A stretch of 64,000 nucleotides of DNA from Ophelia neglecta. Taxonomy: Eukaryota. The stretch covers positions 60,512,001-60,576,000 of the forward strand of contig OZ260661.1 of NCBI GenBank assembly GCA_965285935.1, given 5' to 3'. Under the pieces are notes generated by a model, which searched no databases, had not been told where the DNA came from, and was given only the letters and a program-made list of their open reading frames with translations. The translations under genes and the position numbers were made by a program. Shown in pieces: positions 1 to 47,738 of this stretch (positions are counted from its first letter, which is position 1; every line of letters starts with the position of its first letter).

Positions 1-1848
1 AGTGTTATCTTAAAGTTGTAGGTCTAGATGTTAAAACGACTTGATATTATCATCTGATTTGTTAAATAGCGTCGTTGCCCACCGGAAATTAGTTCGGCGG
101 ATAAACAAACTTGCTTAAGGCTGCTGAGTTGTCATATCCTTGTGCCATATAATTAAGTTTCTAAAGGAATATAAAAGGAACAAGATTATCATTTTGGAAT
201 AACATTTCTCGACTCTGCATCCGATATAAACTTGGCAAAATGTCATTAAGATGATTAATCAAAAGATGTATGTAACTGAGATTTTTATGATCTGATATAA
301 AGGTTTTTTAATGTTTTATTCTTCTAACTTTTAGGTACACAACCCACACAGAAGTTCATCGACATCATATATTTTTACTATTAATAATATAGTACCATAT
401 TATATTCCATTCATAGCTCTCACTTTCTTTTGAAAAGCATGTTATAAAAATGTTATCTGCTTTACCATATCTTAATTTGTTATGCAATTAAGTTTTCTAA
501 TTGATATAAATAAATTGGACCACACGTATGAATCCCGGAGTGCTAAAAAACCAGGGGAATTCCAGACATAATTTGGGCTTCAGTCACCACACGTTTTGTA
601 TATCAGCAGTTTTCCATTATTTGGTAACTTGTATACAATTAGAGTAAAAGTGTTCCATAGTCTCTTGTTCGTCGCAAACTTTACACAATTCATTTTCATG
701 AATTTTGATTTTCTTTATAAAGTATGTATCTACTAGGTACATGTTATGATTTATTTATCACTGTAGGGTTACACTATAAGCGTTTTCCTTGGAGCATATT
801 TTTCCTATATGTAAAGTTCCATTTCATAAATTTGGTGAATGTATCAACAAAACATTGTGACTTCACTTTTTCTATACAAATTCACTATTGTGAAGAAATT
901 GAATAAAGTGCGAAGGCAAAGCCTGACCACTTTATAAATTTCTGAATGTGTCTTTCAGGTCATAAAGTCTCAATACCTTATTGTTATTGCTTTTAGAACA
1001 TATCTCATAAAGATTCAGAGGTACAATATGGCTCATTTGCATAAAAAAAATGCAAGAAGAAATAGATTAAGTTTCGCCGCCGGCGAAACCGGATGTTGTT
1101 TCGTCTTTGCTAAGTTGTTCTTTCTATAGACTATACGCCCTCAACGTCACTCATTTGACCTCCAGGAAGCTTATTTGATTAACACCTGTGTTTCTGGAAT
1201 TTTCTTATTTTAATGAGGCTCTTAAGCATTATTGATTTGAGATGAAAAGTTTATTAAACCGGACGGGGATGGGGCGGGTGGGGTGGGGGGCAGAAATAGT
1301 TGAATTTATACCGTACTTTGTCGGAAAACCTTAAGTTCGGTTAACACTAATCACCTACAGATATGTTGTGATTATAAGTAATACAGGTTAGACTTTGTTT
1401 ATGGACTTCTACTCAAAAAGGAACCCAAAGAACCCAGAGTATACACTCATTAGTGAGAACAGTTTTATATTCAGAGCTGACCATGATAGTTCTTTCATAG
1501 TGAGTGTCAATCATAAAAACTATTTTACCACCTGCTGAATAGTTTTCCTCATTGCCTTTGCTGACCTTAAAACCCATCTGTGCAGAAAAAGCTCAAGTTT
1601 TATATTTGAACAAGGCCTTTCCCTGATTGGTTTAGTTCACATTATAAGGAGAACATTATTGGAAAGGCGAACCAAATGACCAAAGGAGGTCGGGACTCGT
1701 TAAGAAAAAAGACACTTTTCTATGCTAACATTTATGTGCGATTTTTATGATGTTACAACGTGAACTATGATGCAATGTGTTCGTGACGTAGTGATGCCCC
1801 TTAAAATATCTATACTACACATGTACACGTGAAGCTTATTTGATATGA

Positions 1849-1892
1849 AATATATATTTAATATATATATATATAATATATATATATTTATA
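1849..1892. repeat. (TA)n-rich tract
   Basis: Direct reading; similar tracts at 11272-11289 and about 57540-57563. Confidence 0.85.
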
Positions 1893-3014
1893 CATGACAG
1901 TGAAACTATTTGAATTTAATGATATTATATCATAGAGAAGTTCAGATCTTATTTAGGCTCTCTCTGTCCCCACAGCTAGATATGTTAAAAACAGCATTGT
2001 GGACAAATGCCTCAATTACCATATTATATGAACACGGACAATTTTAAACATTGATCTCGAACTACTTATTATCTATTAACAATCAGTGCCACATGGTTAA
2101 ATTACTTGTATGTTGAAAAAAAAGGTAGATCACCGATTAGTTAAACAGTTGATGAACCAATGTATCGTAAGTAAAGTTCCAAATATATTAATAATTAATC
2201 AACATACTAACGTTGGATCAAACTTATTGCTCTTTGCAATAATGAATCAATACAGAATCGACATTGCGATGATGTGATCAATAGAGAACCTTTTGTGGTA
2301 TACCAGTCGACCAAAAGAAGATCAATAGTGTATAATCAATATGATCAATAAAAAATCAATGGAAATCATTTTAAAAATCATTAAGAAAAAATGAAAGCAA
2401 TAGACCATATAAAATCAATAACTAAACTGAGATACCTATTGGTGATGTGGATTTTTGTCAAAGTCATTTGGTTTTATTAATCTTAGTGGTTAAAACTGCT
2501 TATAGGTTTTTTTAAATCTGCAAATAAAACATTTTTTTGCAGGACTACTGGTCATTCCTTCTTTTTATATCCTAGCTTATCTGAATTAAAAATAGCATAA
2601 ACTGCCACCTTATCTGTATTAGAGAGAGTGGTTATCATCTTTGTCGGGCGCCTGGCATGGTTAACGAGAAATCGTTTACACGGATAATCTCTGGACTTTC
2701 AAACTGTAGTTGTTTAAACCTACGCGTTTTGACAAACTATACAAACGGCTGTTAAAACCAACCACTTGGAACCCCGAAAAGTGTGTGTCTTAAAACAGTT
2801 CAAAGTACATATACAAATAACCTGTCCTATACAAAGTAGCAAAGTAGCAATCTATCTGACGTGTACATCGTCCGAGGAGTGCGTAACAAACGTTTACGTG
2901 TATATTGAGAACAAAACGTTGAAAATGTATTAAAACCAATAAACAAGATGTTTACGTAAGAAAGTCGTAAATCCTATGATGGTGTACATATTGTTACTGT
3001 TTTGAATACCACTT

Positions 3015-3073
3015 GGTCGGGGTGGGGGGGGGGGGGGTGTTGGTGGTGGTGGTGGCGGTGGTGGGGTTCGGGA
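3015..3073. repeat. Poly-G/(GGT)n tract (G-quadruplex-prone)
   Basis: Long G run followed by GGT repeats. Explains the poly-Pro spurious ORF 2930-3154. Confidence 0.85.
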
Positions 3074-3884
3074 TGGCACTGTTCTGACCTTCTTGTTCCA
3101 CTTAATGAAAAGATGACAGTTATAGGGGTCCACAACAACTAAAGTGTAAAACATGGCCCAAAAGTTTAAGAAAAGTAAAATATCTAATTATTTTTTCTAT
3201 TATTCTGCTAATAACAAGATTTGTCATAAAAAAAGTTTGTATTTTTGCCAGCCAGCTGGCAGATCTAAGAACACCCAACAGCATAATGTGCTGCTCCCAA
3301 GCAGCATATATACAGCACATTATAAAATTACATTGGGTCAGTACAACGGTGTGCTCCACATACAAATGTATATGCCCATACAGGGATCTCTAAGAGACCT
3401 GATAGCAGTCAGCCAAGATTTTTATATACTTATCTGCTCTTATGAGGTTGTTTTGCCAGCTGGTTGAGTGAGGCATCAAGACATATATTAAAAGAACAGA
3501 TCGTTGGGGACCCCTGCATTTAGCAATGTTGTTTCCGTCTTTCGGCGACAGGGACCCGTCTTGGCCTCTGTTCTGTTTTTTTGTCCTTAGTAGTTATTCG
3601 CGACTCAGCGTCTCCGTTGAGACACGCGAACCTAATTCACTTATGGGGCCTATTTTACTGGATAACCATTATTACACTGTTAAGTTTAATTATTAACAAC
3701 TGTTGCACAGATGTGTTAGTTTTTTTCGTGGAAACCGCCATATTTGATTTCGGTTTAAACTTAAAATATATATTGTACTTTATTTCATAGCATTGCAGCT
3801 AAACCTACAGTACACGCATGCGCGGATAGCTGGGTGCTGACATTAGCCTGATTTTACATTATAATAATAACTTTGGCAGACGAT

Positions 3885-4090
3885 CATGCCTGCTGACGTT
3901 TATCCATGCCTGCTGCTTCCCTGGTTATCCATGCCTGCTTCCTCCCTAGTGTATCCGTGCCTGCTGCTTCCCTGACTATCCATGCCTTCTTCCTCTGGTT
4001 TATCCATGCCTGCTGCTTCCCTGGTTATCCATGCCTTCTTCCTCTGGTTTATCCATGCCTGCTGCTTCCCTGATTATCCTTGCTAGCTTC
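3885..4090. repeat. Minisatellite, 24-26 bp unit (TATCCATGCCTGCTGCTTCCCTGGT), about 8 copies
   Basis: Units start at 3901, 3926, 3952, 3977, 4001, 4026, 4050 and 4075 (partial), with a partial unit upstream. Confidence 0.95.
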
Positions 4091-4255
4091 ATTTGTGGAC
4101 TACATAAACTGCTTAGAACAGAATGCCTGTGTCGTAGTGCAGTAGGCCTCTTTTCTCACGTGACTCAGATTGGCATATTTAAAACTGCGTCAGTTTTGAC
4201 CAGCTATAAAATGCCACAGAAAAATGACGCAGAAAAAGTACACACATATTGAGGC

Positions 4256-4301
4256 TGTGTGTGTGTGTGTGTGCTGGGGGGGGGGGGGGGGCTGAGGGGG
4301 G
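4256..4301. repeat. (TG)n plus poly-G tract
   Basis: Direct reading. Confidence 0.85.
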
Positions 4302-6306
4302 CCATAGTTTCTTAACTCTAAATAGAATGATCATACATGTTTAACCTAGTTCAAAATGGCTTTACCTGACAGTGGTAGCCCCAAAAGAACTAGCCCCTAT
4401 TCTATGCGGATTTTGATATTTAACACTGGTCGTTAAGCCGCACTATAGTGTATGTAAAAAGGAGGGCTGGCGTTGCTTCTATAAAAGGTGCAATTCTAAT
4501 GAAAACGCATATTTTCAATATTCCATTGGAGAGATCAAATGAAGAGTATCACAAGAGGTCTTGTACATAACCATGAAAAGCCTTTCGAGTCAATCCCAAA
4601 GGCATATGCAATGATTAACTGACTGTGGCCAACAGTCTCGCAGATCTGTGAGTACCCTTGGCTTAAGACTATTGACAAGTTACCAATAATGAAAGCCACA
4701 GGTTGTCTTTCGCTTATATTTGAAGAGCAAAACTAGAGGGATAAAAAAACAGAATAGGCCCAAGGAATGACCCTAGTGGCACTCTTATACATGCCATAGC
4801 AGCGTGAATTAGTCAACCGAATTCAAACAGCATGAGATTGAAAAGTGACTTGGTTCAACTTGAAAAGCAGTTGATATTACTAAGAGTAAGAGCAATATTC
4901 TTTACGTCATTGCTAACCTATATTAGAATTTCTTCTATTTGACAAAATTTAAAATCGTCATCTGTGTCCAAGGATATAGAGATATCAATACGGGCTGAAA
5001 CGCACAATGCTGTACAGGGAAGCGCATCACATCTATTCTCACTGATTCTGCTTTACGACAGGCGCCTTTCTTGTTTTTTTCCTATATTTCCGTCTCAATC
5101 AATTTCTAAGCTAATCTGCATCGCAATTTATTTTCAAAATAAACATTTCAATTAAAAACATGTAATTAGCCTATCAGATCACTGATAAATACCCACGTGA
5201 CCTAATCAGACGCTGCGACTTCTAATTCCGAAGTTAGGTTACAACGCTGTCAAGATCCATGTTAATTATGATCTTCCAGGAAGATTGAATTGCCATCATT
5301 CCGACAGTTGATAACTTTTAAAATTATTATGGCCCTTGCACCAGAGGACATTTATAACGCAGGAGTCGTCCAGATCTCTGATCCCTACAGCCTGCCTGTA
5401 GCTGTTCTAGGGCTCGATACATTCTCGAGTGTTCACGTTGTGGTGGGAGTAAGTCATTTTCGGCGGAAGGTCTCAAGGGTTCGATTCGTAAAGTTTGCCA
5501 TTAGCGGTTATGACAAGCTAATTTAGAGGTTCCGATCACCCTTGCTGCGGCACACATTGTAATCTATTGACTACAGACAAGGTCCGGGTCTCGCCCTTTC
5601 TTAAAGAAACAGAACACCATGATGGTACTCATTTTTTCTTTAAATTTTTTATATCATATTGGCGTAAAACAATCCAAAGCGCTGTCTTTCTGTATGGTAC
5701 TTTTGCATTCATTTTTGGACCTGACTACATGACTTTAGGTGGCGATATAGGACTATAATATGATAGTACATGTATACAGTATTTGCCATTCTTGTATTCT
5801 GCTGAGACAAAACCAGTGAGTACTTGTTAATTCTCTCCCCTCGGGATCACTAGGATAGAATCATATTTCAATACTCATTGAAATCTGCGATAGCCCTGGT
5901 CTATATGCAGTTGCAGTTTTGCCCTTTTGAAGGGCAATGTGTAGAGCGAACAGCGCGAAGGCGCCATGAGAAACGCGCCAGCCTGGGAATGACGCCATGT
6001 TCTGTCATGTTCTTCAGTTATTATTCCCCAGACAGGCTCGTGTTCCACCTGAACAAATAAACCCAGGTGACAGGACCTTGTAGATTCGTGTCGGGGTGTG
6101 TGCCGAGAGGTTTTCTAACTAGTAACTGTTACAATCGCCAAACCCCGTTATGGGCCCATGATAACTTCACGTCCTCGTCACGTGGTGCAACCTAAAACCT
6201 TCTCCACCATAGACTTGTAACAAATATCCATCTGCATCAAGAAGCGAACAAATGGGTGGTATCTGTGAATATACACCACCATACTTATTTTATGAATGTG
6301 GGCGTC

Positions 6307-6984
6307 TAGTCAGAAAAGTCCGAAACATAACTGGAAAAAACGTTCAAACTTTTTAAAAAGGTAAACTCAACGCCACGAGGTAAGAAAACTTTTAAAGTTG
6401 TCATGTACAGATTTTGATAACAGGAAGAAACAAACAAAAAACAACTGAAGTAATTACATGCTGTCCCAAAGAAAAAAAGGGAAAAAAATGTACTCCTATT
6501 TGGTTACATTTGTATAAAAGGCGAAATGTGATACCTGCAGCTCCTACAGAGTGATGTCTGGTATTTCTCGCCTCGTTAAATTTCGCATAGTAAGTGATCT
6601 TATATTCTGTTCACGATGTGCGCAGAATAAGCCTGCTTACTGCGTATAGTCAGAAAAGTCCGAAACATAACTGGAAAAAACGTTCAAACTTTTTAAAAAG
6701 GTAAACTCAACGCCACGAGGTAAGAAAACTTTTAAAGTTGTCATGTACAGATTTTGATAACAGGAAGAAACAAACAAAAAACAACTGAAGTAATTACATG
6801 CTGTCCCAAAGAAAAAAAGGGAAAAAAATGTACTCCTATTTGGTTACATTTGTATAAAAGGCGAAATGTGATACCTGCAGCTCCTACAGAGTGATGTCTG
6901 GTATTTCTCGCCTCGTTAAATTTCGCATAGTAAGTGATCTTATATTCTGTTCACGATGTGCGCAGAATAAGCCTGCTTACTGCG
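6307..6984. repeat. Exact tandem duplication, 340-bp period
   Basis: 6307-6644 is identical by eye to 6647-6984 (338 bp), separated by TA. Confidence 0.95.
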
Positions 6985-9900
6985 CAGAGTTAGACGATAC
7001 CTGAAGCTGTTTACCTTATTCTGTGCTCGCGAACGCCGTGCTTTCTGCGCGGAATCAAACACTGTCCGATACCACGTGACTTTACCCTTTACCCCATAGT
7101 ACGATACATAGGCTCCGGTGAATGGTAGGCCTACAATATACTGTCAGCAGTTATTTTATTACTCCTATCAACTGCAATCGAGACACATTAAGGTAAGAAA
7201 AGTAGAACCTCTGGCGTGTCTGTCACCGCCAACTCGGGGCCGAAATACACAAGAGACATAGACATTTTCCAGAAAAATTTAAAAATAAAGGCGATAGCAT
7301 CAGAATGAAGGTTGACCATAGTGGCCGGGTGCGGAGTTTTAAAAGGTCCTTTGTCATCAGTCCAAGTTGTTTATACAATAGGTAGGCCCTATAGGCCTAG
7401 GGCCTTAATGCATATATACTTAACTACAACTTAAGCAACATTCACAATTTGACTAGTATCTGACACAAATAAGCAATTGAAGGAAAATAAAATTAATTGA
7501 ATAGCAATACAACACCTGTCCATTTGCACCAGCAGAGTGCCTGTATAGTCGAAACGCCTCGACCCCTGTACATTAATTAAAACAACTTGATGGACAATGT
7601 TTGACCAGCGCTTTTATTATAGCTCTGCGGGTTGAGCAGGTTGTGATGATAATCTTGTGTAGTTATGATGTGCATAGTCATGCATGTAGCTGTAAAAATA
7701 ACAGATAACCACAGATCATCATCCCACGCGTCAAAAATTAGATTCATAATTATAACGAACGGTGGAAAGAAGTGTGCGGGTTCGGTTTACCACGATACTT
7801 GGTCAACAATATACAGGCTTGCTACGTCGGATAACAAAAATGTCTGCAGTTACCGCATCAAACTTGGTGTCAACAAGCAAAGTGCAAGAGTATTCTGCTC
7901 ACTTTGTCCGAAAATATGAAATAAACAATTCACTCCAGAAAGTATGTACAATTTTGGCATGTAGTCAATCTGAAAATGATTTGCCATTTATCATATAGTT
8001 CGTTTTGAGTAAGTTTGCCGCATATTGTGTTTAGTTTAATACCAGAGCTTGTAAATATGATCGACATAGTGCTAGGCCTACCTGTTTGAATATCTAGCTC
8101 CTCTAGTTACATTTATGCATCTATATAGGCATTCCTGATCCATTAATAAACAAGTAAAATATATGACTTAAATTTCAAATATAATGATTTTTGTTCAAAC
8201 TGTTGGGCATTGGGCCTATAGTTATTTAGCTTGGATGGAGGACAGGCAAAACTGTACTTCCATTACAGTATATATGATCCCTTGGAGTAGTTCTTATGGC
8301 GTGACTATTCAGATTAATCCGCGTGAAGACAGGTAATCAGTCCGTATTCCGGTAGTCGTCTATTGTGAGACGCTGACTGAACTCCTCCTCAGCCGATCAA
8401 AGGCTTGGCTTCCGCGATCCTCGCCGCCCATAAACCAACACACGGACAGAGATAATTCCCAATGTATAATAACCTTTCTGCGTTTTCAAATCCAATTAGT
8501 CACACGTTTGATTAATTTCATCCAACACGCAATGGTCAGCATGGCTAATGGAAGTGGGCAACAATTTTCGGCTGAAGTCGAATGGAACTGGATCACTTTG
8601 ATTGAATGTGACTCTCGGCGTATTGCCCGGCTATTGATGTGGACAGTGGGTCTAGGCCAAGATCATTTGACTTCATTTGGCAGGTGGAGACAGTCCTTGA
8701 TTCTACCTTATTAGAACAATGAAAAACAACAGCACTACTGATTCAGACAGGTCTATCAGCGTTTTTTTTAGAGTAACTCTATAATAATATGCATGCATAT
8801 CAATCCCCCCACCCCCACCCCTACCCACAAGATAATTTAACATGCTACGTTATTAACATTGTTATCCTCTCCCAGAAGATGTGAATGGATCAAATAAGCT
8901 TCACTGACTCCTTTGCCAAAGAGAGGAATCCCTAAACAAAGTGGTGCAATACGAATTTAGAAAATGAGTCAATGTTGAGTTAGGTAATCCAACTTAATCC
9001 TGGAAATAAGGCCAACAGATAATCCTAGTTAACTTGCCATCTCTTTGAATTGGTGAAAGCTTTCCACAATAGATATTGTCACATTCACTCTTTTATGTTC
9101 ATGGCTACTGAAGAGTACTCGCAAATGAGCTTAGTGTGGATTGAAATGTCCCACAGCCCGTCTCCTTTATGTGAACGACGCGTATGATTTGAATATTAGG
9201 CAGTGATGTCACAATTCGTGTGGTTTGTAGCCTGGCAGTCTCGGAGGAACATAGACTAAAGGAACAAGGGTCTCTGTGAGATAAAGTACGCGATTTGAAA
9301 AAAGCAAAGTGCAAGCAGTGTCAATATTATTAGGCAGAGGGCAAGATTACCAGCAAATATATATAGTTTTATAATATAGGCCTCTTCCTCTCGCTCTGTT
9401 CCACCAAAGTTAAAATTATACAAATTAAGACTTCATTTGTAAAGCGCAAAAGCTTAGAAACCAAATGTGGAAATTGTGTACTATATTTCTTTCATACTTC
9501 CTTATTTAAGGGCATAGATCTTTATATACCCACTATGGGAACTGTTACAATTAAACATTTCATACCAACTAGTGAAACATTAATAAAAAGATTGATGTAG
9601 AACCTGAACCACCGAGGCTTTGAATATACTCACAAGTAAAATGTTGTTTACTCCACTTAATTATAAAGCTGCTTCTGAGAATATTATGCCACATGAAAGC
9701 GCTGATACCAGGATCTCCTTAGGACATTACTGGAGACGAAGGTAGTATTGTTTTATAATAGCATCAGAATAGCATCTGGTTTTTAAGATTAACGTGCGGC
9801 TGAGACTGCATGAGTTTATCAATCATTCGGAGTCGGGGACTATTGACAGGAACGACAAAGTACTTATGTCATCATATCGATCATAAGGACATAACACACA

Positions 9901-12599
9901 CTCATCGCCATTCTTTCTGGTTATCTTCCTCTGGTTTACAGCATATCTTCTGTTATAGTTTCACTAAAAGTATATAGAATGACCATTTGACGGACAGGAC
10001 AGCAACAAACTCTTTTGTATTTGGCAATAACAATCACTCAATTTTTACGTTTAACGTCAAATGGTGGAATATTAATTGTTGTCATTTTTTATGTTTCCTC
10101 ACTAGTAGATTGTTGTAGTCGTAGTCGAGTGGGAAAGGTTCAATCAATTATGCATTCATTGCTCTTTTTTCATATGTCTGAGTCAGAAAGACGTGATGGT
10201 AGAAAGTTAGCCGATCATTATTTAATGTGATAAAAGAAGCTTTTGAGTATGTCTGATGTACATTTTCCCTTCTATATCCTTCCCACATTTGCCACCGTTG
10301 TTTCAAATGTATTTACATTTATGGCAGCTCACTTCCAAGCCAGTTGGGACTTATTTACACATGGACAAGATAATATTTTAAGATTCCTCGCCCAGGTTCT
10401 ACGGTGTCATGTCTCGGCAGGATTACAAAGGCTTGATCGGCAACATCAGGTGAAAAATGACCGCAACAATGCTCGAAGGAACAGGGTATAATGGCCGGGG
10501 TCGTCTTGGATTAGGCCTTTAAAATTAAAGCCCGATGCATCATCTTTCAGGGGAGACTCTATGACAGACCACAGACAAGAAAATTACAGATTCGCTCCCA
10601 GATCACGCCATTGCATCACTGTGCACAAAAGAAAAACGAGCGTGCCATGATTTAAAATCATCATTATTTTGTGTGATGAGGTCTATCAAATCAGCCATGA
10701 CATAGCATTTCATCAAATTTTCACGTATAAGATTCATATGATGCATTAAGCTACTGTTCGTCTTCATGGTTATCTTCTTTGGCCTTTTCTTCGCTGTCAA
10801 ACTCGATCAATTTTCAGTTGTCCGTTGTCCCAGTATTAATGAACACACGTGGATATATCATGGATGTTTACAACAACTCCTTGTGTCTAAGCAATGCGTC
10901 TACATAATGTTACATATACATGTTAACAGACAGGTTAAGTTTTTTTTATGTTGATTTTATGTTTACACTTGCCACTTGTTCCTTCCAGGAACAGTAACAT
11001 GCATAACTAATTGAGTTGATGTGTTTCACTGTGAAGAAGTAAGTGACAATAAGATGTACTTTTTTTACAATATTTTCATATTTATTGCAAGTTTAATTAC
11101 TGCCAAACATACAATTATCAATAACAATCATGTGTGGATTACAATTATAAAACTTTGATTTGCTCCTTTGGAAGCCTTTTCATTGAGAGGTTTATTCGTT
11201 ATATGGGCGATATAATATTGGCATAAATATTTATATCATGTGGTTTCATAATTTATAACACAACCTTAATCTATATATATATATATATAGGATGACCAGA
11301 AGGCAGTACAATTCATAATAATACCTGAAGAAATCATACATTTTGTTCGAATAGGAACAAAATATGATAAATTAAAAAGATGTCTTAATTAGAGACAAAT
11401 ACATGAACATCTACATTTTATAATAATTCCATGTCAACTGTGAACAAGGAGCACCACACCATGAACACCAGACCAGTGAGACAATACAAGCTTTCCATTT
11501 ACACATTTGGTTCTCTACAATCCAGTTTAACTTGACCACTAAATGTTCATGTGCACCATATAAATATTTACGAAACGTGTACAGTTTGTACACTTCGTGC
11601 ATCAGAGTTATTCATTTAAATAATTTTACAACTCTTTTGCTATCTTACATAGATATATGTTATCAGCTCACCTCTGCAGTAGGAAAAAATGCCAATCAGG
11701 ACGAGGTTCATTTTTTAAAATTGTCTTAGATTCTTCCCTTCAGTCATTGCTTAATTAAATTGGCAGCTCTTTAACTGGACACCATAACCAACACATAAAT
11801 TCTAGGCAGGTTATGTTACGATTGGCAGACTTGGCATATACTCGAATGGAAAGGAATTATTATGACAAATAATAAATAAATATTGGGAATGTAGAGTGTA
11901 AATAATTGGAATGCTCGAGATTACCCTGATCACCTAGCAATAGTTTATTTACGACAAGTCCAATGTTCAAAAAAGGATTGATTGGAAGAGCATACATGAT
12001 CCACATATCATATACACGACTTGGAAGAAAAAAGGTATGCCCATCATAGCCAGCTGACCCACACAGGGTAACTTTGTGGCAACATACGATATAGGCCTAG
12101 GCCTAACTTGTCACCGACTGTGATATAAATATGTAGGATTACATAAATACGTTTTATAATGAAGTTTCAGATCTATCATTGCAGGGGAGTGTGAACCAAA
12201 GAAGCTCGCTCAAAACTCACCAGCCAGAAACATGGCTTACATATACGGATTGTTAAACAGCAAGAAAACGGGTAAAATTGAAGTTTGGCGTAGATCAACA
12301 GTCCGTTATCTAAGTCTGCTTATCCCTTGATTAAATGGCAAGATTTTGTAAGTGAGGCGATCCGTGTCTAGTGTAAAGTGGGGCCGACGAGATTCAAAGT
12401 ATGAGCCCTCCACACTGGCTCCGGAGGCCCTCACCCATCTGGGCTGTACACACGCTTTGTGTGCGTCTTTCTCATGGAGCAGACGGACCTTGTCTTCATT
12501 CTGCATAGCGTGAAATACTAAGTGCTACAAACGCGGGAAACTGTGCTAAGTTCCCATCAGTGTTAAACTAAAATCAAGACTGGGGAAAAGCGCAATAGC

Positions 12600-13330
12600 A
12601 TTTGCCAGCTTAACACATGTCTCTCACATGGCTTGTTGGAAGATATGGAGAGACGTAGTTGACCAGGAAAAGTGGGTCTAGGTCAGGTTACGTATGGGCC
12701 ACGTGACCCTTGGTTTTCTAACACTCTGAAATATATAATCAAGTTGGAATGAATCTGTGACAATAAGTGTCATGAAGCAGTTTGCTGACTAAGAAGTTTC
12801 AAGATTCTCATATTTGACACTGAAAATAACCCAAGGGTTGCAGTTTCCCAAATCGAACGATTATGAATGCACGCCCAAAGAAGTTCCTTCACATGATTTG
12901 GGTGAATTTCATTGATCGGTAACATTTCCGCCATATTTGGAAAAGACGGAATGTTGCTCTTGGACAATAGTTGTAAAAGAATAATAATTTTAGAGAAACT
13001 GAAAAGGAAGATTGTGATAAATCCCCACAAAGGTTCCATACACCGGTTTCAAAGTGGGTGGGTCCAGAACCCACAAACCAGACGTTGAAATTGGGCATCT
13101 AAAATACGAATTCCACGAATAAGATTTCTGATGGCCGTACAAAGTATTATTTGGTTGAATCTGATAAGGAGCAGAATAATGAGTTGTAAAGCGGAATGAA
13201 TACTTTCCTGTCCACCTAACAAAAAAAAAATCTAAAACGTGACCTTGAAAATAAAGCCGAATATATCAAAAATAAAGCAGGTCTCATCTTCGATGAATTA
13301 CTTGTTTTATGAAGATAACTGTTTTAAAAA
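12600..13330. mobile_element. Possible decayed interspersed repeat (Helentron/HINE-like)
   Basis: Recurrent degenerate TTGG..TGAATCTG-like motifs (about 12741, 12895, 13148) and GTGACCTTGAAA. Resemblance only; boundaries are uncertain. Confidence 0.2.
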
Positions 13331-14890
13331 TTGTTGAGGAAGAAAGTTGGACTTGTGACTTTGAAATCAAACTACAGTTGTGGACATTTTACCAGTTTGT
13401 GACAATATTTTTAGCTGACATTTTTTACTTTCTTTTAGCGGTGCCTGAATTATTTGGCAAACCCCAAGTGGAATTCGGACGGCCACTGGTAAAAATAAAA
13501 TGTGTGTATGGTCTTCCTGGACGACATAGATAGACTCGACCTGGTTAGTTGCTTAAAATGGAAGTGGGAAAATATGTATTCACTCGGGGACGCAGAAAGA
13601 AGGAAGTACGCACATATTATATTGATAAAACAAACACTGTAGAATATATCTTGATAAATTTCCGAAGCAGAACAATCGTATTGCATTGTATGTCCGTCAT
13701 GTATGGCAAATTTAGTATAGAATACATGTGATCATATAGCAGTTTTCATTTGGGCTTCATGTCACACAAGTCGGGTGACTTTAGGTGATGTTGCCGACTG
13801 ACTGAGGATGCAGAGGAAACAGTCGACAATCAGGGGCCAGTTTTTCAAGAGCTCCTTGAAGGTCGGGGTTCAAAGCCATTACATCTGGTAGATGTTAACA
13901 GGTAAATGCGATCAGATGTCGACTTCCACCTTCAGACAAGATCCGCCCTGGGTAAACTTATCAAAGACTGTTGCCTCCGGATTGGGGACCTCAGCCGGAA
14001 TCACATTGTCAAAACTCATGATAAATGTTGTCGCCAGCCCACATAACAAGACTGCCTGCACTTTTCCCCAATTAGCCCAAGTTGGCTTTCAGTATGCCGA
14101 TTTCATTTCGCTGGGCTCGCAAAGAGGATGTTCGACTCTTTGGCTAAGTTGAGTTAAAATGGCCCCTTATAGATCCCTGCCTCCTCCAGCCCAGACTATG
14201 TTTGCTCTTATTTATCGTCTGCTTCCAGCCAAGCCTCAGAAGATTGAGTTGAAAGACGTCTATTGCCTTTTAATTTGTACAAATTGATGAATTTGGCACT
14301 GCCATCATCAGTCAAATAAACGTTAGCCCTTCATTGGACGCCAGACAAGGATATTTCAGTTTTCATACAAATGTAGGTAAACATCGTCTATATAGGTACT
14401 TACTGGCAAATACCCGTGTCCCCTATATCCTCCATACACTACACTTATAAATATGGACATGTACTTATTTTGAAGACACTGAGAAGACCTCCGCTGAAAA
14501 TCGAGAATCCTGTCTGTGAGAAATTTGAAAACCTGCCAAATTACCCTCTCTACATACCAAAATGATTACCGAAAGATTAGGCAAATTGAACAATTGCATG
14601 AGGCAAATTAACAAAGAAGTAAAACCGTGTAACCGACTTACAAACAATGCCAATGATAGGTTAATCACTTTTGGTACCGAGCTTTTGAGTTCACGTCTTG
14701 TTTGTGAATAGACGCTTAATATCATAGCTTTCAGGGGCTGGTGGTATTGAGCAATTCGTTAGTCATAAAATTAATAATCACTCACTTGACGGAACGCAAT
14801 ACTTAGTTTCATAAGTAGAAACATAGTAATTTGTGTTAAAAACTATGCAGAATGTTGTTAATTCATAAAATTATTAGATTGTCTAACATT

Positions 14891-14899
14891 TACCCTGTA
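14891..14899 (-). promoter_or_regulatory. miR-10-family 8mer target site in the putative Hox1 3'UTR
   Basis: mRNA-sense TACAGGGTA is complementary to miR-10 nt 1-9 (UACCCUGUA), about 365 nt after the stop codon. Confidence 0.55.
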
Positions 14900-15103
14900 T
14901 TGACCAACCTAGGAAACGTAACAAAATAAAAATAGGTGATTGTGTGGGAATGTACTTATCAAAAGTGTTTCTATGGTGACACCGCGACATACTTTCATAA
15001 TACACCTTATACACATATATACACACTTATTTGGATTATGCTTCAAATGATTCCTTTTGGAGCGTGCATCTACAGGAACTCGTGCTCAAGTCAGACTCCT
15101 CTT

Positions 15104-15156
15104 GATTGGACAATGATGGCCACGTGATTAAAAAAAGTTCCTCAGATGTCACGTGG
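15104..15156 (+). promoter_or_regulatory. Inverted NF-Y/USF cassette 3' of Hox1 (candidate antisense promoter)
   Basis: GATTGG 15104-15109, 11-bp spacer, CACGTG 15121-15126. Second E-box GTCACGTGG 15148-15156. Confidence 0.5.
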
Positions 15157-15262
15157 TAGGTCCGCAGAGCAGAAGTGTCCTCTGACCCCCAAACTTGACT
15201 GGATCTTTGATATGACTAGCATGACTGGAATATTTTTTTTGAAATGACTAAAAACGTATTCC

Positions 15263-15558
15263 TTAACTGTCGTCTGCTTGTAAAGAGCCATCATTAGAAC
15301 CGTCACTGTTCACGCCACTATTACCTATAACACCAGGAGATTCCTTCATGCGTTTCTTTTGCTTCATTCGACGGTTTTGAAACCAAATTTTCACTTGAGT
15401 TTCATTCAGTCCAAGGGCCGCAGCGATTTCTATTCTCCTAGCTCTTGTGAGGTATTTGTTAAAGTGAAACTCCTTTTCTAACTCAGTCAGTTGTTTGTTT
15501 GTAAAATTTGTCCTGCCCATATTTGGCTGGCCTTGGTAACCGTACTCGCCAGACTTCC
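15263..15558 (-). CDS. Hox1: Hox1/labial, coding exon 2 (homeobox 15526-15347)
   Basis: Acceptor poly-T-CAG|GG (AG at 15560-15559), phase 1 matching exon 1. Homeodomain [60 protein letters not shown] is diagnostic of paralogy group 1. Spliced CDS 966 nt = 321 aa. Confidence 0.98.
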
Positions 15559-15887
15559 CTGAAAAAAAAAATACCAAGTAAGTACTCATTGAACAAGCAA
15601 ATTTTAGATGCGTTTTTTAGATACCAAGGACTTACTAGGTTTATTTTGTTTCCATGTTTACTGATAACGGTCAAGAATATTAAAGGTGGTGTTATTTGGC
15701 TCGAAAGAAAAACATGTGCCTGAATCGTATTATTTATACAGACTACACTTTTTTTGAATAATTCAGCGTTATATTAGTACTAATATTTTGATAGTGATAG
15801 TATCATGTTAACCATCCCTATCATGCAAGTAATATTAAGGTCGATGACTTTAGGACAGGCACATATGGCCTATCCTGACCGCTAATG

Positions 15888-22430: not shown

Positions 22431-23559
22431 AATTAAACCAGTTCCTCCCTCAAGATAAAAGGGCTGTTTGAAGCTGGACACATAAAATGTGTCATCCGAG
22501 TGTGCCCTGCCCTAACCCCTGACCCTCCGGCGGCCAGGCCCCGTCTCCGGCTGGTTGCCAGCCTCTCTCGCCCGGCTGCAGGCATATTGCCGCGGTCACT
22601 TGCCAATCCCACTTTTATGTGGCTCATATAACGACTAATCAACTAGCCATCATAAAACTGATGGGCTAAATTGCAGTTATTGTATAGAGCACTGTGATTA
22701 ATTATGATGACAATAGAGCTATTTTGCACTCTACAGTATAGGCCTTTAAGGTGGGGGTGCCAATTACATATAAGAAAGCATCATTTGATCATATAAATTG
22801 AATTTTAAAAAAGCTTCATATTTTGCATTACTCACTCTTGGAATGTTTATTTTTTCGCGTGTTGTTTGTTTGACAGGTATTATTAGCCTTCCAGACCTTT
22901 CAACGCCCTTCTTCTGCTAAGCAGACGATGAAATATAACCCAAATAAAGCGTCTTATTCGCTTACAAGCAGTTACAAGCATGTAGCGGTTAGAATGAATG
23001 TTCCAAGAAGCAACTCTGCCATAAATCAGACGAGGAAAGCATTATTTCTTACGCTAATAGAGCGCAGGTTTTTACTCCGGCAGACGACTCTGGTGCAAAA
23101 CGAGCGGTAAATCATGGTCTAACTAAAGGAAGCAGGCCTTTAACACACTACGGCTTGTGACATTTTAATCTCAGCCGGCACGTGGATTTGATTATTGTCT
23201 CTTCTAAACGCCCCAATGGAGATCTTTATGACCCATCCCATATATCTCCCACCGCTCTGTTTATCCTCAAGCATGGATTTATGTCCCTCGAGTTTTGGCC
23301 AGCAAGTCAATTGTCTTCCGCACAGCGTGTTTGTCAGAATGCTAGGCAGTGGTGCTACCCCAATGTTTACATGCTTTTCACCTATTGAGCAGTTGTAAAA
23401 CACGGATCTATTAAGTTGGAAGAGATTAGAGGTATATTAGATAGTAATGATCGAATTAGCCAGGAGTTTGATTGATATTTGATTATGTCAATGGTCGAGT
23501 ATGAAAGGGGCAAGTATAGGAATTCAAATAAAAAAGAGAGTCGACATCACCTTTCTCAC

Positions 23560-24229
23560 CTGTTTTCGGCGTACTTCGTTTGACTGTCATCCATTTGTAT
23601 GTTGTTGTTGGGGGTCCCTGATCATGTGTGGGGCTGGAGGAAAGTCCTTGGGAGGAGCACAACACCCCGTAACCCGCCGCTGTGCCTGGGGAGTTACACA
23701 TGATGGGGTTACAGTCCGAGTGGTCAGGGTAGCACGAGGAGGGGTAGCCAGAATTGGGCATGCCATGGTGTGGGGGCATATCAGGGAGGGTACCGTTCAT
23801 TCCCATGTTTCCTGGGGGTCCGTAGTACGGAGGGTAGGGAGCCTGTCCGTGGTGTTGGGCTCCGTTATGACCCGTACCCCCTCCACAGGCAGCTCCTGGG
23901 TGTAGTCCGTAGGCAGTAGGTGCCTGCTGGTTAACTCCGTTGCCGTGGCTCAGCACTCCGTTTCCCGTGGTCTCGTAGCCCATGGGCGGGCCCTGCTGGT
24001 GGCCACCGGTCAGGTCCTGTAGCCCGGCGGATCCGTGGTGATGTCCCGGGTGCATGCCAGCCCCTGCCCCTGGGCCAGGCCCTCCGTACCCGTAATGCTG
24101 TCCGGTGTCAACCAGACCATTGTTTACGTTAGAGTAACTATAATTCGAGGTGGAAATAGACTCCGGATAGCTTGTGCTGTAAGTATTATTGTCCAAGTTA
24201 CATATCGTGTACTCTCCGTTCGAATTCAT
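23560..24229 (-). CDS. Hox1: Hox1/labial, coding exon 1 (N-terminal domain and hexapeptide)
   Basis: ORF MNSNGEYTICN... (resembles the HoxB1 N-terminal EYPLCN), G/P/H/Y-rich, with the labial-type hexapeptide TYKWM followed by TVKR. Donor ACAG|GTGAGA, intron starting at 23559. Exon is 670 nt (phase 1). Confidence 0.95.
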
Positions 24230-24445
24230 AATTTACACTGGCTAGCAGACTTGATCTGTCAATGGACTAGCACAAATTAGCTGTCGATGGTCAGATAAAT
24301 CTGAAATAAATGAAGCTAAATTACACGTCGCACTTGACAGGATTATGAGGGTTAAATTGGTCACGTGGCTGCGGTCAACCAATCAGAAGTCAGGCCATTG
24401 CTGTGGAGTCTACTCAATGCGCTGGTTGATGGATGGCATGACAAA
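24230..24445 (-). promoter_or_regulatory. Hox1 5'UTR/proximal promoter: E-box plus CCAAT cassette, Pbx-Hox1 site, Meis sites
   Basis: GGTCACGTGGCT 24359-24370; CCAATC 24379-24384; TGATGGATGG 24427-24436; TGACAG 24335-24340; CTGTCA 24256-24261. All lie within about 215 bp of the ATG. Confidence 0.7.
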
Positions 24446-47413: not shown

Positions 47414-47738
47414 CTAAGTCATTTATGGAGTGTTGTTGCCCGTCCGAACCGGCCTGTCGCCGACTTGGTTTTTTCTCCTTCATCCATGGGTATTCCGGTA
47501 CTTTTAGACTGGAGAGTGAACCGGCATGCTGGCTTTTACCCGGAGAGGCACCATTTACCGGGGTGATATCGGCCGGTAGGCGATCAGAACCATTGAGCAC
47601 TTGGCAGAAAGACGGCATCCTTGAAAGCTGGGTGATTGATGACATGGAGTAGCGCTCATTGATAGCTCCCAAGTCCGTCATAAATTCGGCAATACACGGC
47701 TGACTGTTGATGAATCCCGACTCACGATTGTCTTCCAT
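47414..47738 (-). CDS. Hox2: Hox2/proboscipedia, coding exon 1
   Basis: MEDNRESGFINSQPCIAEFMT matches the PG2 N-terminal GFINSQP motif. Hexapeptide EYPWMKEKK. Donor TTAG|GTATGA; 325 nt, phase 1. Confidence 0.96.

What the first reader, a model, noticed from the sequence alone, without database searches (positions are those of the whole stretch)
15104..15583. Third, inverted copy of the Hox promoter cassette predicts an antisense RNA across the Hox1 homeobox exon
Seen: on their transcribed strand the Hox1 and Hox2 promoters read GATTGG-n11-CACGTG. The same arrangement (ttGATTGGacaatgatggcCACGTGatt) occurs on the plus strand about 140 bp beyond the Hox1 stop, pointing back into the gene, with a second GTCACGTGG at 15148. 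None of the other CACGTG sites I inspected has a CCAAT box at this spacing. A plus-strand donor CAA|GTAAGT (15578-15583) lies just past the Hox1 acceptor, so an antisense first exon would cover the whole homeobox exon and its 3' splice site. Inference: a convergent sense/antisense pair driven by the same factors, able to mask splicing or cause transcriptional interference. Alternatively, the paired cassettes act as a 3' enhancer or gene-loop anchor.
Basis: partly seen in the sequence, partly recalled or inferred. Interest (0 to 1): 0.8.

Follow-up and report, generated by a model that had tools for sequence, protein, structure and literature searches.

The report
Inverted Hox-promoter motif behind annelid Hox1
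A two-part DNA motif (CCAAT box, 11 bases, E-box) that sits in front of Hox1 to Hox5 in this annelid-like genome also occurs once, backwards, just after the Hox1 stop codon; it is real and unlikely to be chance, but its proposed role as an antisense promoter could not be tested and it is absent from the closest relative.

Summary
GATTGG-n11-CACGTG lies at 15104-15126 (+), 137 bp past the Hox1 stop. A second GTCACGTGG lies at 15148-15156 and GTAAGT at 15578-15583. The window holds three n11 cassettes against 0.03 in shuffles. The stretch is single-copy, and an alternative haplotype keeps both motifs and the spacing.

New context: the same cassette (n10-12) lies 75-195 bp before the ATG of Hox1, Hox2, Hox3, Hox4 and Hox5, always on the gene's strand. 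The Hox1 copy keeps its exact n11 spacing in three relatives. It resembles the NF-Y/USF composite element described in mammals and the two elements of the human HOXB4 promoter.

The third copy lies inside the probable Hox1 3'UTR. It is not conserved in the nearest relative, where both motifs are mutated, and is absent downstream of Hox1 in five further taxa. A distant relative carries its own inverted cassette in the Hox1 intron, which argues against pure chance. GTAAGT is common here and does not support the proposed donor.

No RNA data exist for this organism, so antisense transcription is untested. A preprint reports Hox1 antisense RNA over the homeobox and 3'UTR in Alitta virens. The scan's other notes on this cassette concern this same window only.

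Verdict: a plausible, lineage-specific antisense-promoter candidate (about 0.35), unproven.

The parts
15104..15126 (+). Third, inverted copy of the CCAAT(GATTGG)-n11-E-box(CACGTG) cassette, lying in the DNA of the probable Hox1 3'UTR
   Evidence: single-copy in the genome; both motifs and the spacing are intact in the alternative haplotype
15148..15156 (+). Second USF-type E-box, GTCACGTGG. TCACGTGG (15149-15156) forms an 8-bp perfect inverted repeat with CCACGTGA (15120-15127)
   Evidence: RNA fold of the region is not significant (z = -1.26)
15578..15583 (+). GTAAGT, the proposed antisense splice donor. On the - strand it reads ACTTAC, 20 nt upstream of the Hox1 acceptor, and it is one arm of a 26-nt inverted repeat (15561-15586 / 15627-15652)
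   Evidence: ACTTAC is kept in L001 but not in L015 or the other taxa
15263..15558 (-). Hox1 exon 2 (homeobox), stop codon at 15263-15265
23560..24229 (-). Hox1 exon 1, from the ATG at 24229 to the donor G|GTGAG after 23560
24362..24384 (-). Hox1 promoter cassette GATTGG-n11-CACGTG, 133 bp before the ATG
   Evidence: It is 22/22 identical in L001. The n11 spacing is kept, with a different spacer sequence, in L014 and L108
47932..47954 (-). Hox2 promoter cassette GATTGG-n11-CACGTG, 195 bp before the ATG at 47737
14269..14274 (-). First poly(A)-signal-like hexamer (ATTAAA) downstream of the Hox1 stop. It is conserved in L001 and implies a 3'UTR of about 1 kb that contains the cassette
13809..14307 (.). 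Conserved non-coding block 1-1.45 kb past the stop. It is not part of the cassette. It is a rival candidate for a conserved 3' enhancer or antisense promoter

Best explanation
Positions 15104-15156 hold a real, single-copy extra instance of the CCAAT-n11-E-box composite site, plus a second USF-type E-box. The site is of the NF-Y/USF type and heads Hox1-Hox5 in this cluster. It lies in inverted orientation in the DNA that encodes the Hox1 3'UTR.

Shown:
- the motif, its spacing and its rarity;
- its identity of grammar with five Hox promoters;
- its lineage-specific presence.

Inferred:
- The site is bound by the same ubiquitous factors as the promoters. The genome encodes an NF-YA domain.
- In the orientation used at all five promoters, it starts plus-strand transcription that runs antisense through the homeobox exon. 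That would be a Hox1 natural antisense transcript.
- Such a transcript could damp or sharpen Hox1 output by transcriptional interference or by pairing with the sense RNA.
- Such antisense promoters would turn over in position between species: 3'UTR here, intron 1 in a distant relative, none found in the nearest relative.

The specific splice donor at 15578 is not supported.
For: - The cassette is exact and rare: 3 in the window against 0.03 in shuffles. The conditional expectation for the third copy is 0.01-0.06, or 0.008 within the Hox1 locus.
- A further CACGTG lies 23 bp away.
- Genome-wide, GATTGG-n11-CACGTG occurs 180 times against 36 for the control, and spacings n4-18 together give 820. 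Among the first 100 listed places, n11 is about 4 times commoner than other spacings after obvious repeat families are removed.
- The same cassette (n10-12) lies 75-195 bp before the ATG of Hox1, Hox2, Hox3, Hox4 and Hox5, always on the gene's strand.
- The Hox1 copy keeps n11 in three relatives while the spacer sequence changes.
- The CCAAT flanks of the third copy (GTCCAATCAA) resemble those of the Hox3 promoter copy.
- A distant relative (L014) has an independent inverted exact cassette in Hox1 intron 1, where 0.008 are expected.
- The genome encodes the NF-YA DNA-binding domain.
- Literature: a CCAAT/E-box distance of 10-12 bp at sites shared by NF-Y with USF1/2 and MAX (PMC4889920; PMC3730095). 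NF-Y and USF1 can bind their motifs in unmodified chromatin (PMC3730095). The human HOXB4 core promoter needs ATTGGCT and CACGTG (PMC2193192; PMC3675019).
- In Alitta virens, a sense probe over the Hox1 homeobox and 3'UTR detects antisense RNA (bioRxiv 10.1101/2021.01.30.428931).
Against: - No RNA data exist for this organism, so no plus-strand start or junction has been seen.
- The cassette is not conserved in the nearest relative L001. The region between the conserved blocks 15564-15197 and 14907-14879 aligns poorly. The corresponding sites read TCAAT, TACGTG and CATGTG with a different spacing, and no copy with up to 1 mismatch exists anywhere in that locus.
- No antisense cassette lies within 3 kb (or to the contig end) after the Hox1 stop in five other taxa (L016/17, L018/19, L063/64, L065/66, L067).
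- If Hox1 antisense RNA is ancestral in annelids, its promoter should be conserved. The conserved block at 13809-14307 is then a better candidate.
- GTAAGT is frequent on this strand.
- In a crude ORF test on 40 other n11 sites, orientation did not predict a downstream coding start (2 against 7).
- In mammals the composite works in either orientation relative to the start site. PMC3730095 places the TATA element on the CCAAT-reading side.
- Hox2 and Hox3 have no E-box near their stops.
Confidence: 0.35

Rival explanations
1. The site is a neutral, young motif cluster. A perfect CCAAT-n11-E-box and a second E-box arose, or survived, by chance in the fast-evolving proximal 3'UTR of this lineage. 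They may be bound but have no selected function and yield no meaningful transcript.
For: - It is not conserved in L001, while about 15 other non-coding blocks of the locus are 69-94% identical.
- It is absent in five further taxa.
- CACGTG is three times enriched across the whole window (23 against 7.6), which raises local chance.
- Heterozygous variants at 15128 and 15142 show the stretch is not frozen.
- Many unique n11 sites genome-wide show no sign of a nearby gene start.
Against: - Even conditioned on local motif counts, the expectation is 0.008-0.06.
- Using the window's own E-box density (23 in 64 kb), I estimate that an extra E-box within about 40 bp of the cassette has a chance of roughly 0.03.
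- An independent inverted exact copy occurs in the Hox1 intron of L014. By my estimate from those expectations, two of three loci carrying an extra copy has a joint chance of about 2e-4.
- L001 has one-mismatch remnants of all three motifs in the same order. So either all 17 core bases were retained here or three sites were perfected here.
Confidence: 0.3
2. The site is a 3' cis-regulatory element for sense Hox1: an enhancer, a promoter-tethering or loop partner of the identical promoter cassette, or a USF-type chromatin barrier at the 3' edge of the cluster. It produces no stable antisense RNA.
For: - It has the same grammar as the Hox1 promoter 9.2 kb away.
- NF-Y binds enhancers as well as promoters, including a Hoxb4 intronic enhancer, and USF is known at barrier elements (PMC3730095 and references cited there).
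- USF1 recruits the hSET1A H3K4 methyltransferase complex to the HoxB4 promoter (PMC3675019).
- Hox1 is the first Hox gene at this end of the cluster in the window, and no ORF of 90 aa or more apart from one of 104 aa lies in 1-15000.
- The extra copy in L014 is intronic, which suits an enhancer as well as a promoter.
Against: - It is not conserved in L001, unlike the neighbouring block at 13809-14307.
- No looping or orientation rule is known for NF-Y/USF.
- PMC3730095 reports that sites co-bound by NF-Y and USF in unmodified chromatin do not behave as acetylated barriers.
Confidence: 0.25
3. The element acts on the sense strand. Either it works at the RNA level within the Hox1 3'UTR (the two CACGUG palindromes pair into a hairpin), or it is an internal minus-strand promoter for a short transcript made of the distal 3'UTR.
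For: - No AATAAA or ATTAAA lies between the stop and 14274, so the cassette is transcribed within the mRNA.
- There is an 8-bp perfect inverted repeat, 15120-15127 with 15149-15156.
- TATA-like runs lie about 90-100 bp beyond the CCAAT box on the minus strand.
Against: - The fold is no better than shuffles (z = -1.26; 23 of 200 shuffles fold as well).
- It is not conserved.
- There is no Rfam match in the window.
- The orientation is opposite to that at all five Hox promoters.
Confidence: 0.07

Closest known systems
NF-Y/USF composite element (CCAAT box and CACGTG E-box at a fixed 10-12 bp), described genome-wide in human cells (PMC3730095, PMC4889920)
   Same: Both have a CCAAT pentamer with NF-Y-type flanks and a canonical CACGTG at one fixed spacing. 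Here the gap is n11, with n10-12 across the Hox promoters. The spacing is preferred genome-wide in this genome too.
   Different: Binding is not shown here. The mammalian distance is measured from inside the motifs, so equivalence with the edge-to-edge 11 nt is probable but not proven. In TATA promoters of mammals the start site lies on the CCAAT-reading side, whereas here all five Hox genes lie on the ATTGG-reading side.
Human HOXB4 core promoter elements HxRE-1 (ATTGGCT, NF-Y) and HxRE-2 (CACGTG, USF1/2) (PMC2193192, PMC3675019)
   Same: A Hox promoter that reads ATTGG then CACGTG on the sense strand shortly before the gene. The annelid Hox4 promoter, and those of Hox1, 2, 3 and 5, read the same way.
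   Different: The copy under study is not in front of a Hox gene. It lies behind one, in inverted orientation. The exact HOXB4 spacing was not available in the text read.
Natural antisense transcripts of annelid Hox genes, e.g. Avi-antiHox1 in Alitta virens (bioRxiv 10.1101/2021.01.30.428931; review PMC8293171)
   Same: Antisense RNA was detected with a sense probe covering the Hox1 homeobox and 3'UTR. That is the stretch a transcript from 15130-15300 (+) would cover.
   Different: That is another species. [quoted passage not shown] No RNA evidence exists for this genome.
Vertebrate antisense lncRNAs at the anterior end of Hox clusters (HOTAIRM1 between HOXA1 and HOXA2; PMC8293171)
   Same: Antisense transcription at the Hox1 end of a cluster, co-regulated with neighbouring Hox genes.
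   Different: HOTAIRM1 lies between Hox1 and Hox2, upstream of Hox1, and does not cross the homeobox exon. There is no sequence relation, and the window has no Rfam match.

Membership tests
NF-Y/USF-type CCAAT-E-box composite element | CCAAT pentamer with NF-Y-favoured flanks | tested here: met
   GTCCAATCAA on the - strand. The Hox3 promoter copy reads GTCCAATCAG and the Hox4 copy GACCAATCAA.
NF-Y/USF-type CCAAT-E-box composite element | Canonical CACGTG E-box at the fixed spacing used by functional copies | tested here: met
   n11, as at Hox1, Hox2 and Hox4. Genome-wide, n11 gives 180 hits against 36 for the control, and n4-18 together give 820. The literature value is 10-12 bp (PMC4889920).
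NF-Y/USF-type CCAAT-E-box composite element | The organism encodes the binding factors | tested here: inconclusive
   The NF-YA domain PF02045 was found at C9:27564124-27565067 above the cut-off. USF was not searched, because no specific family model was used.
NF-Y/USF-type CCAAT-E-box composite element | Occupancy by NF-Y and USF in vivo | not testable with these tools
   No ChIP or CUT&RUN data are reachable.
Hox gene promoter cassette of this cluster | Lies 75-215 bp upstream of a Hox start codon on the same strand | tested here: not met
   There is no ORF of 90 aa or more on the + strand downstream. The only long ORF nearby is Hox1 exon 2 on the - strand.
Hox gene promoter cassette of this cluster | Motifs and spacing conserved in relatives | tested here: not met
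   The promoter copy is kept in L001, L014 and L108. The third copy is lost or absent in L001 and in five other taxa.
Promoter of a Hox natural antisense transcript | RNA from the antisense strand with 5' ends just downstream of the element | not testable with these tools
   No RNA run is on record, and the runs laid are DNA contigs.
Promoter of a Hox natural antisense transcript | A used splice donor at 15577/15578 | tested here: inconclusive
   The consensus is good (CAA|GTAAGT), but GTAAGT occurs 3 times in 2.4 kb. It lies in an inverted repeat. It is kept in L001 only.
Conserved 3' Hox1 enhancer | Sequence conservation among relatives comparable with the other non-coding blocks of the locus | tested here: not met
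   The cassette falls in the gap between the conserved blocks 15564-15197 and 14907-14879. The block at 13809-14307 does meet this feature.

The most novel reading that the evidence does not exclude
Annelid Hox1 genes repeatedly acquire an inverted copy of their own NF-Y/USF promoter grammar inside the transcription unit: in the 3'UTR in this species and in intron 1 in a distant relative. The same ubiquitous factors would then fire a convergent antisense RNA. This would form a self-limiting sense/antisense circuit whose promoter position turns over while the logic is kept. It would also give the first mapped promoter for a spiralian Hox antisense transcript.
Probability: 0.2. Interest if true: 0.75.

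Novelty: new member of a known kind. Interest (0 to 1): 0.45.

Why it matters
Antisense transcripts of Hox genes have been seen in annelids only by in situ hybridisation, and their promoters and logic are unknown. If this element is active, it gives a precise 53-bp target for 5'RACE, reporter assays and deletion. It would let one test whether sense and antisense Hox1 RNAs are driven by the same factors.

Independently of that, the work shows that five consecutive Hox genes of a spiralian share a CCAAT-n10-12-E-box promoter grammar, and that the Hox1 copy is deeply conserved. Human HOXB4 depends on the same two elements. This points to an old, shared core-promoter design for Hox genes that can be tested by comparative genomics.

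Tried and rejected
- RNA evidence: the look-up of sequencing runs returned only three DNA-type runs of one sample. Laying them showed even cover of exon, intron and flank, and only haplotype differences.
- More relatives by DNA: an 18-mer from the conserved 3'UTR block gave 38 metagenome contigs, and none carries a Hox1 homeobox, so all are chance matches.
- Several relatives' contigs could not be fetched because the sample files were too large.
- The L015 contig ends 124 bp after the stop, before the cassette position.
- I tried to extend L014 through a called downstream gene, but its reading frame contains a stop, so an exact-product look-up was not possible.
- Neighbouring gene: I considered that the promoter-like sequence after the Hox1 stop in L016 and L018 marks a conserved neighbouring gene. 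There is no similarity among L016, L018, L001 and the window by blastn or tblastx, and the L018 ORF looks spurious.
- Repeat origin: a repeat family does carry a GATTGG-n11-CACGTG variant with a TCAACCCCGCT spacer. However, the 15040-15240 stretch is single-copy.
- RNA hairpin in the 3'UTR: not significant.
- Known RNA families: none in the window.
- Orientation test on 40 other n11 sites by ORF asymmetry: no support. Two sites had an ORF of 100 aa or more downstream and seven had one upstream, and several of those ORFs are internal exons. The method is too crude to decide.
- The intronic E-box at 23179 is not the counterpart of the L014 inverted cassette, and it reads CACGTT in L001.

Full report
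**What is there**

The window holds the anterior end of a Hox cluster on the minus strand.
- Hox1 exon 1 runs from the ATG at 24229 to 23560. A phase-1 intron of 8 kb follows.
- Exon 2, with the homeobox, runs 15558-15263.
- The best named matches of exon 2 are annelid Hox1 proteins from Platynereis, Perionyx and Lamellibrachia, so the genome is most likely an annelid.
- The two exons were searched separately by reference.

**Checking the observation**

- GATTGG (15104-15109), 11 nt and CACGTG (15121-15126) lie on the plus strand, 137 bp past the stop codon at 15263-15265.
- GTCACGTGG lies at 15148-15156 and GTAAGT at 15578-15583. The Hox1 acceptor AG is at 15559-15560.
- ATTGG-n11-CACGTG occurs three times in the window against 0.03 in shuffles.
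- No other E-box of the 23 in the window has ATTGG at n8-14. The other 40 spacings between 0 and 40 give four hits in all.
- Given the local motif counts, one more copy is expected 0.06 times for ATTGG and 0.011 times for GATTGG.
- The stretch is single-copy in the 762-Mb genome.
- Contigs of three DNA runs confirm it. An alternative haplotype differs at 15128 and 15142 but keeps both motifs and the spacing.

**What the cassette is**

Genome-wide counts:
- GATTGG-n11-CACGTG occurs 180 times against 36 for the reversed control.
- All spacings n4-18 together give 820 against 434.
- About a third of the listed n11 hits belong to repeat families. One is a repeat end carrying a TCAACCCCGCT spacer.
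- After removing these from the first 100 listed places, n11 is still about four times commoner than any other spacing. The arrangement is therefore preferred in this genome.

The Hox cluster is a hot spot. Eight of the first 100 places lie within 320 kb around the window. Fetching them showed the cassette before three more Hox start codons:
- n12, 75 bp before the Hox3 ATG. This lies 314 bp beyond the window end.
- n11, 92 bp before the Hox4 ATG.
- n10, 98 bp before the Hox5 ATG.

Together with Hox1 (133 bp) and Hox2 (195 bp), five consecutive Hox genes carry it. In every case ATTGG is on the sense strand.

The Hox1 copy is deeply conserved:
- It is 22/22 identical in the nearest relative L001, which is 76% identical in exon 1.
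- It keeps the exact n11 spacing, with a different spacer sequence, in two distant relatives, L014 and L108, at 36-38% identity.
- Conserved motifs and spacing with a free spacer are the signature of a composite factor site.

The cassette resembles elements known from mammals:
- The CCAAT/CACGTG module at 10-12 bp, found at sites shared by NF-Y with USF1/2 and MAX in human cells (PMC4889920, PMC3730095).
- The two elements, ATTGGCT and CACGTG, on which the human HOXB4 core promoter depends (PMC2193192, PMC3675019).

The genome encodes an NF-YA domain.

**Where the third copy sits**

On the minus strand there is no AATAAA or ATTAAA between the stop and 14274. That ATTAAA is conserved in L001. 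The cassette therefore lies inside a 3'UTR of about 1 kb. A transcript started just downstream of it on the plus strand would indeed cross the whole homeobox exon.

**Conservation**

Window and L001 share some 15 non-coding blocks of 69-94% identity across the locus. They include:
- the first 70 bp of the 3'UTR;
- a 29-bp block at 14879-14907, the site another note reads as a miR-10 seed match;
- a 500-bp block at 13809-14307.

The cassette falls in the gap between blocks. At the corresponding place L001 reads TCAAT, TACGTG and CATGTG with altered spacing. No copy with up to one mismatch exists anywhere in that 20-kb locus.

A second close relative, L015, ends before the site. Five further taxa have no antisense cassette within 3 kb, or to the contig end, after the Hox1 stop. 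Hox2 and Hox3 in the window have no E-box within 1.5 kb after their stops.

So the third copy is lineage-specific, in sharp contrast to the promoter copy.

**An unexpected point in favour**

The distant relative L014 has, besides its promoter copy, a second exact GATTGG-n11-CACGTG. It is also inverted, about 480 bp into Hox1 intron 1. The expectation per locus is about 0.008. By my estimate from that figure, two of three loci carrying an extra copy has a chance of about 2e-4. Both extra copies are inverted. This suggests that inverted copies inside Hox1 recur and move, rather than being noise.

**The splice donor**

GTAAGT occurs three times on the plus strand in the next 2.4 kb. The copy at 15578 reads ACTTAC on the sense strand, 20 nt before the acceptor, which is branch-point-like. 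It is also one arm of a 26-nt inverted repeat. It is present in L001 but not in L015 or the others. It adds nothing to the case.

**Direction**

All five Hox promoters use the same orientation, which favours plus-strand output from the third copy. Two points weaken this:
- In mammals the composite is used in both orientations relative to the start site (PMC3730095).
- A crude ORF-asymmetry test on 40 other n11 sites gave no directional signal.

**Transcription**

No RNA run is on record for this organism, so the core claim stays untested. A preprint reports antisense RNA detected with a sense probe over the homeobox and 3'UTR of Hox1 in Alitta virens, and antisense RNAs for most nereidid Hox genes (bioRxiv 10.1101/2021.01.30.428931; review PMC8293171). 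Their promoters are not mapped. If such an RNA is ancestral, the conserved block at 13809-14307 is at least as good a promoter candidate as the cassette.

**Verdict**

The element is a new, inverted, lineage-specific member of a known kind of composite site, and this site type turns out to head five Hox genes here. My estimates are:
- 0.35 that it fires an antisense Hox1 RNA;
- 0.25 that it is a 3' regulatory element without a stable antisense product;
- 0.30 that it is a neutral, young motif cluster;
- 0.07 that it acts on the sense strand, at the RNA level or as an internal promoter.

The interpretation cannot be decided without stranded RNA or chromatin data.

Noticed in passing
G000:C1:60576314-60576337 (314 bp beyond the window end), 60664048-60664070, 60759173-60759194; loci L020, L021, L022: The Hox3, Hox4 and Hox5 promoters carry GATTGG-n12/n11/n10-CACGTG 75-98 bp before their start codons, on the sense strand. 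With Hox1 and Hox2, five consecutive Hox genes share this grammar, which resembles the human HOXB4 HxRE-1/HxRE-2 pair.
   Followed up: partly
window 13809-14307: A 500-bp non-coding block is conserved with relative L001 (82% overall, and about 93% by my count over the inner 280 columns of the alignment), 1-1.45 kb past the Hox1 stop. It begins at a conserved ATTAAA. It holds a conserved CCAAT box, a GATA site and a DR1/DR2-like nuclear-receptor half-site pair. It may be a 3' enhancer or a conserved antisense promoter.
   Followed up: partly
window 14879-14907: A 29-bp block is 93% identical to L001 inside the otherwise unconserved 3'UTR. It covers the site another first-reader note reads as a miR-10 seed match.
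   Followed up: no
L014 11131-11153 (minus): A distant relative has a second, inverted, exact GATTGG-n11-CACGTG about 480 bp into Hox1 intron 1. The surrounding intron does not align with the window.
   Followed up: partly
genome-wide, e.g. G000:C1:19903629, C1:82163905, C2:16613172 (loci L002-L013): A dispersed repeat family carries a GATTGG-n11-CACGTG variant with a TCAACCCCGCT spacer about 20 bp from one end, followed by internal short repeats. It inflates genome counts of the motif. Other small families carry CTGAGCGTGAG and TGCGGGTAGGC spacers.
   Followed up: partly
window, whole: CACGTG is three times over-represented in the window (23 against 7.6 in dinucleotide-preserving shuffles). 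This is beyond what the six cassette and paired sites explain.
   Followed up: no
window 24356-24384: The Hox1 promoter E-box is flanked by CCAAT boxes on both sides (GATTGG-n11-CACGTG-A-CCAAT). The second CCAAT is kept in L108 but not in L014.
   Followed up: no
L016/L017, about 150-230 bp after the Hox1 stop: Another annelid-like taxon has a GC-rich stretch right after the Hox1 stop with two CACGTG sites. By eye it also holds CRE-like, ETS-like and YY1-like motifs, so it looks like a CpG-type promoter. It has no similarity to the window.
   Followed up: partly
window 15561-15586 / 15627-15652: A 26-nt inverted repeat (81% complementary) lies at the 3' end of the Hox1 intron. It places GTAAGT on both strands 50 bp apart.
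   Followed up: no
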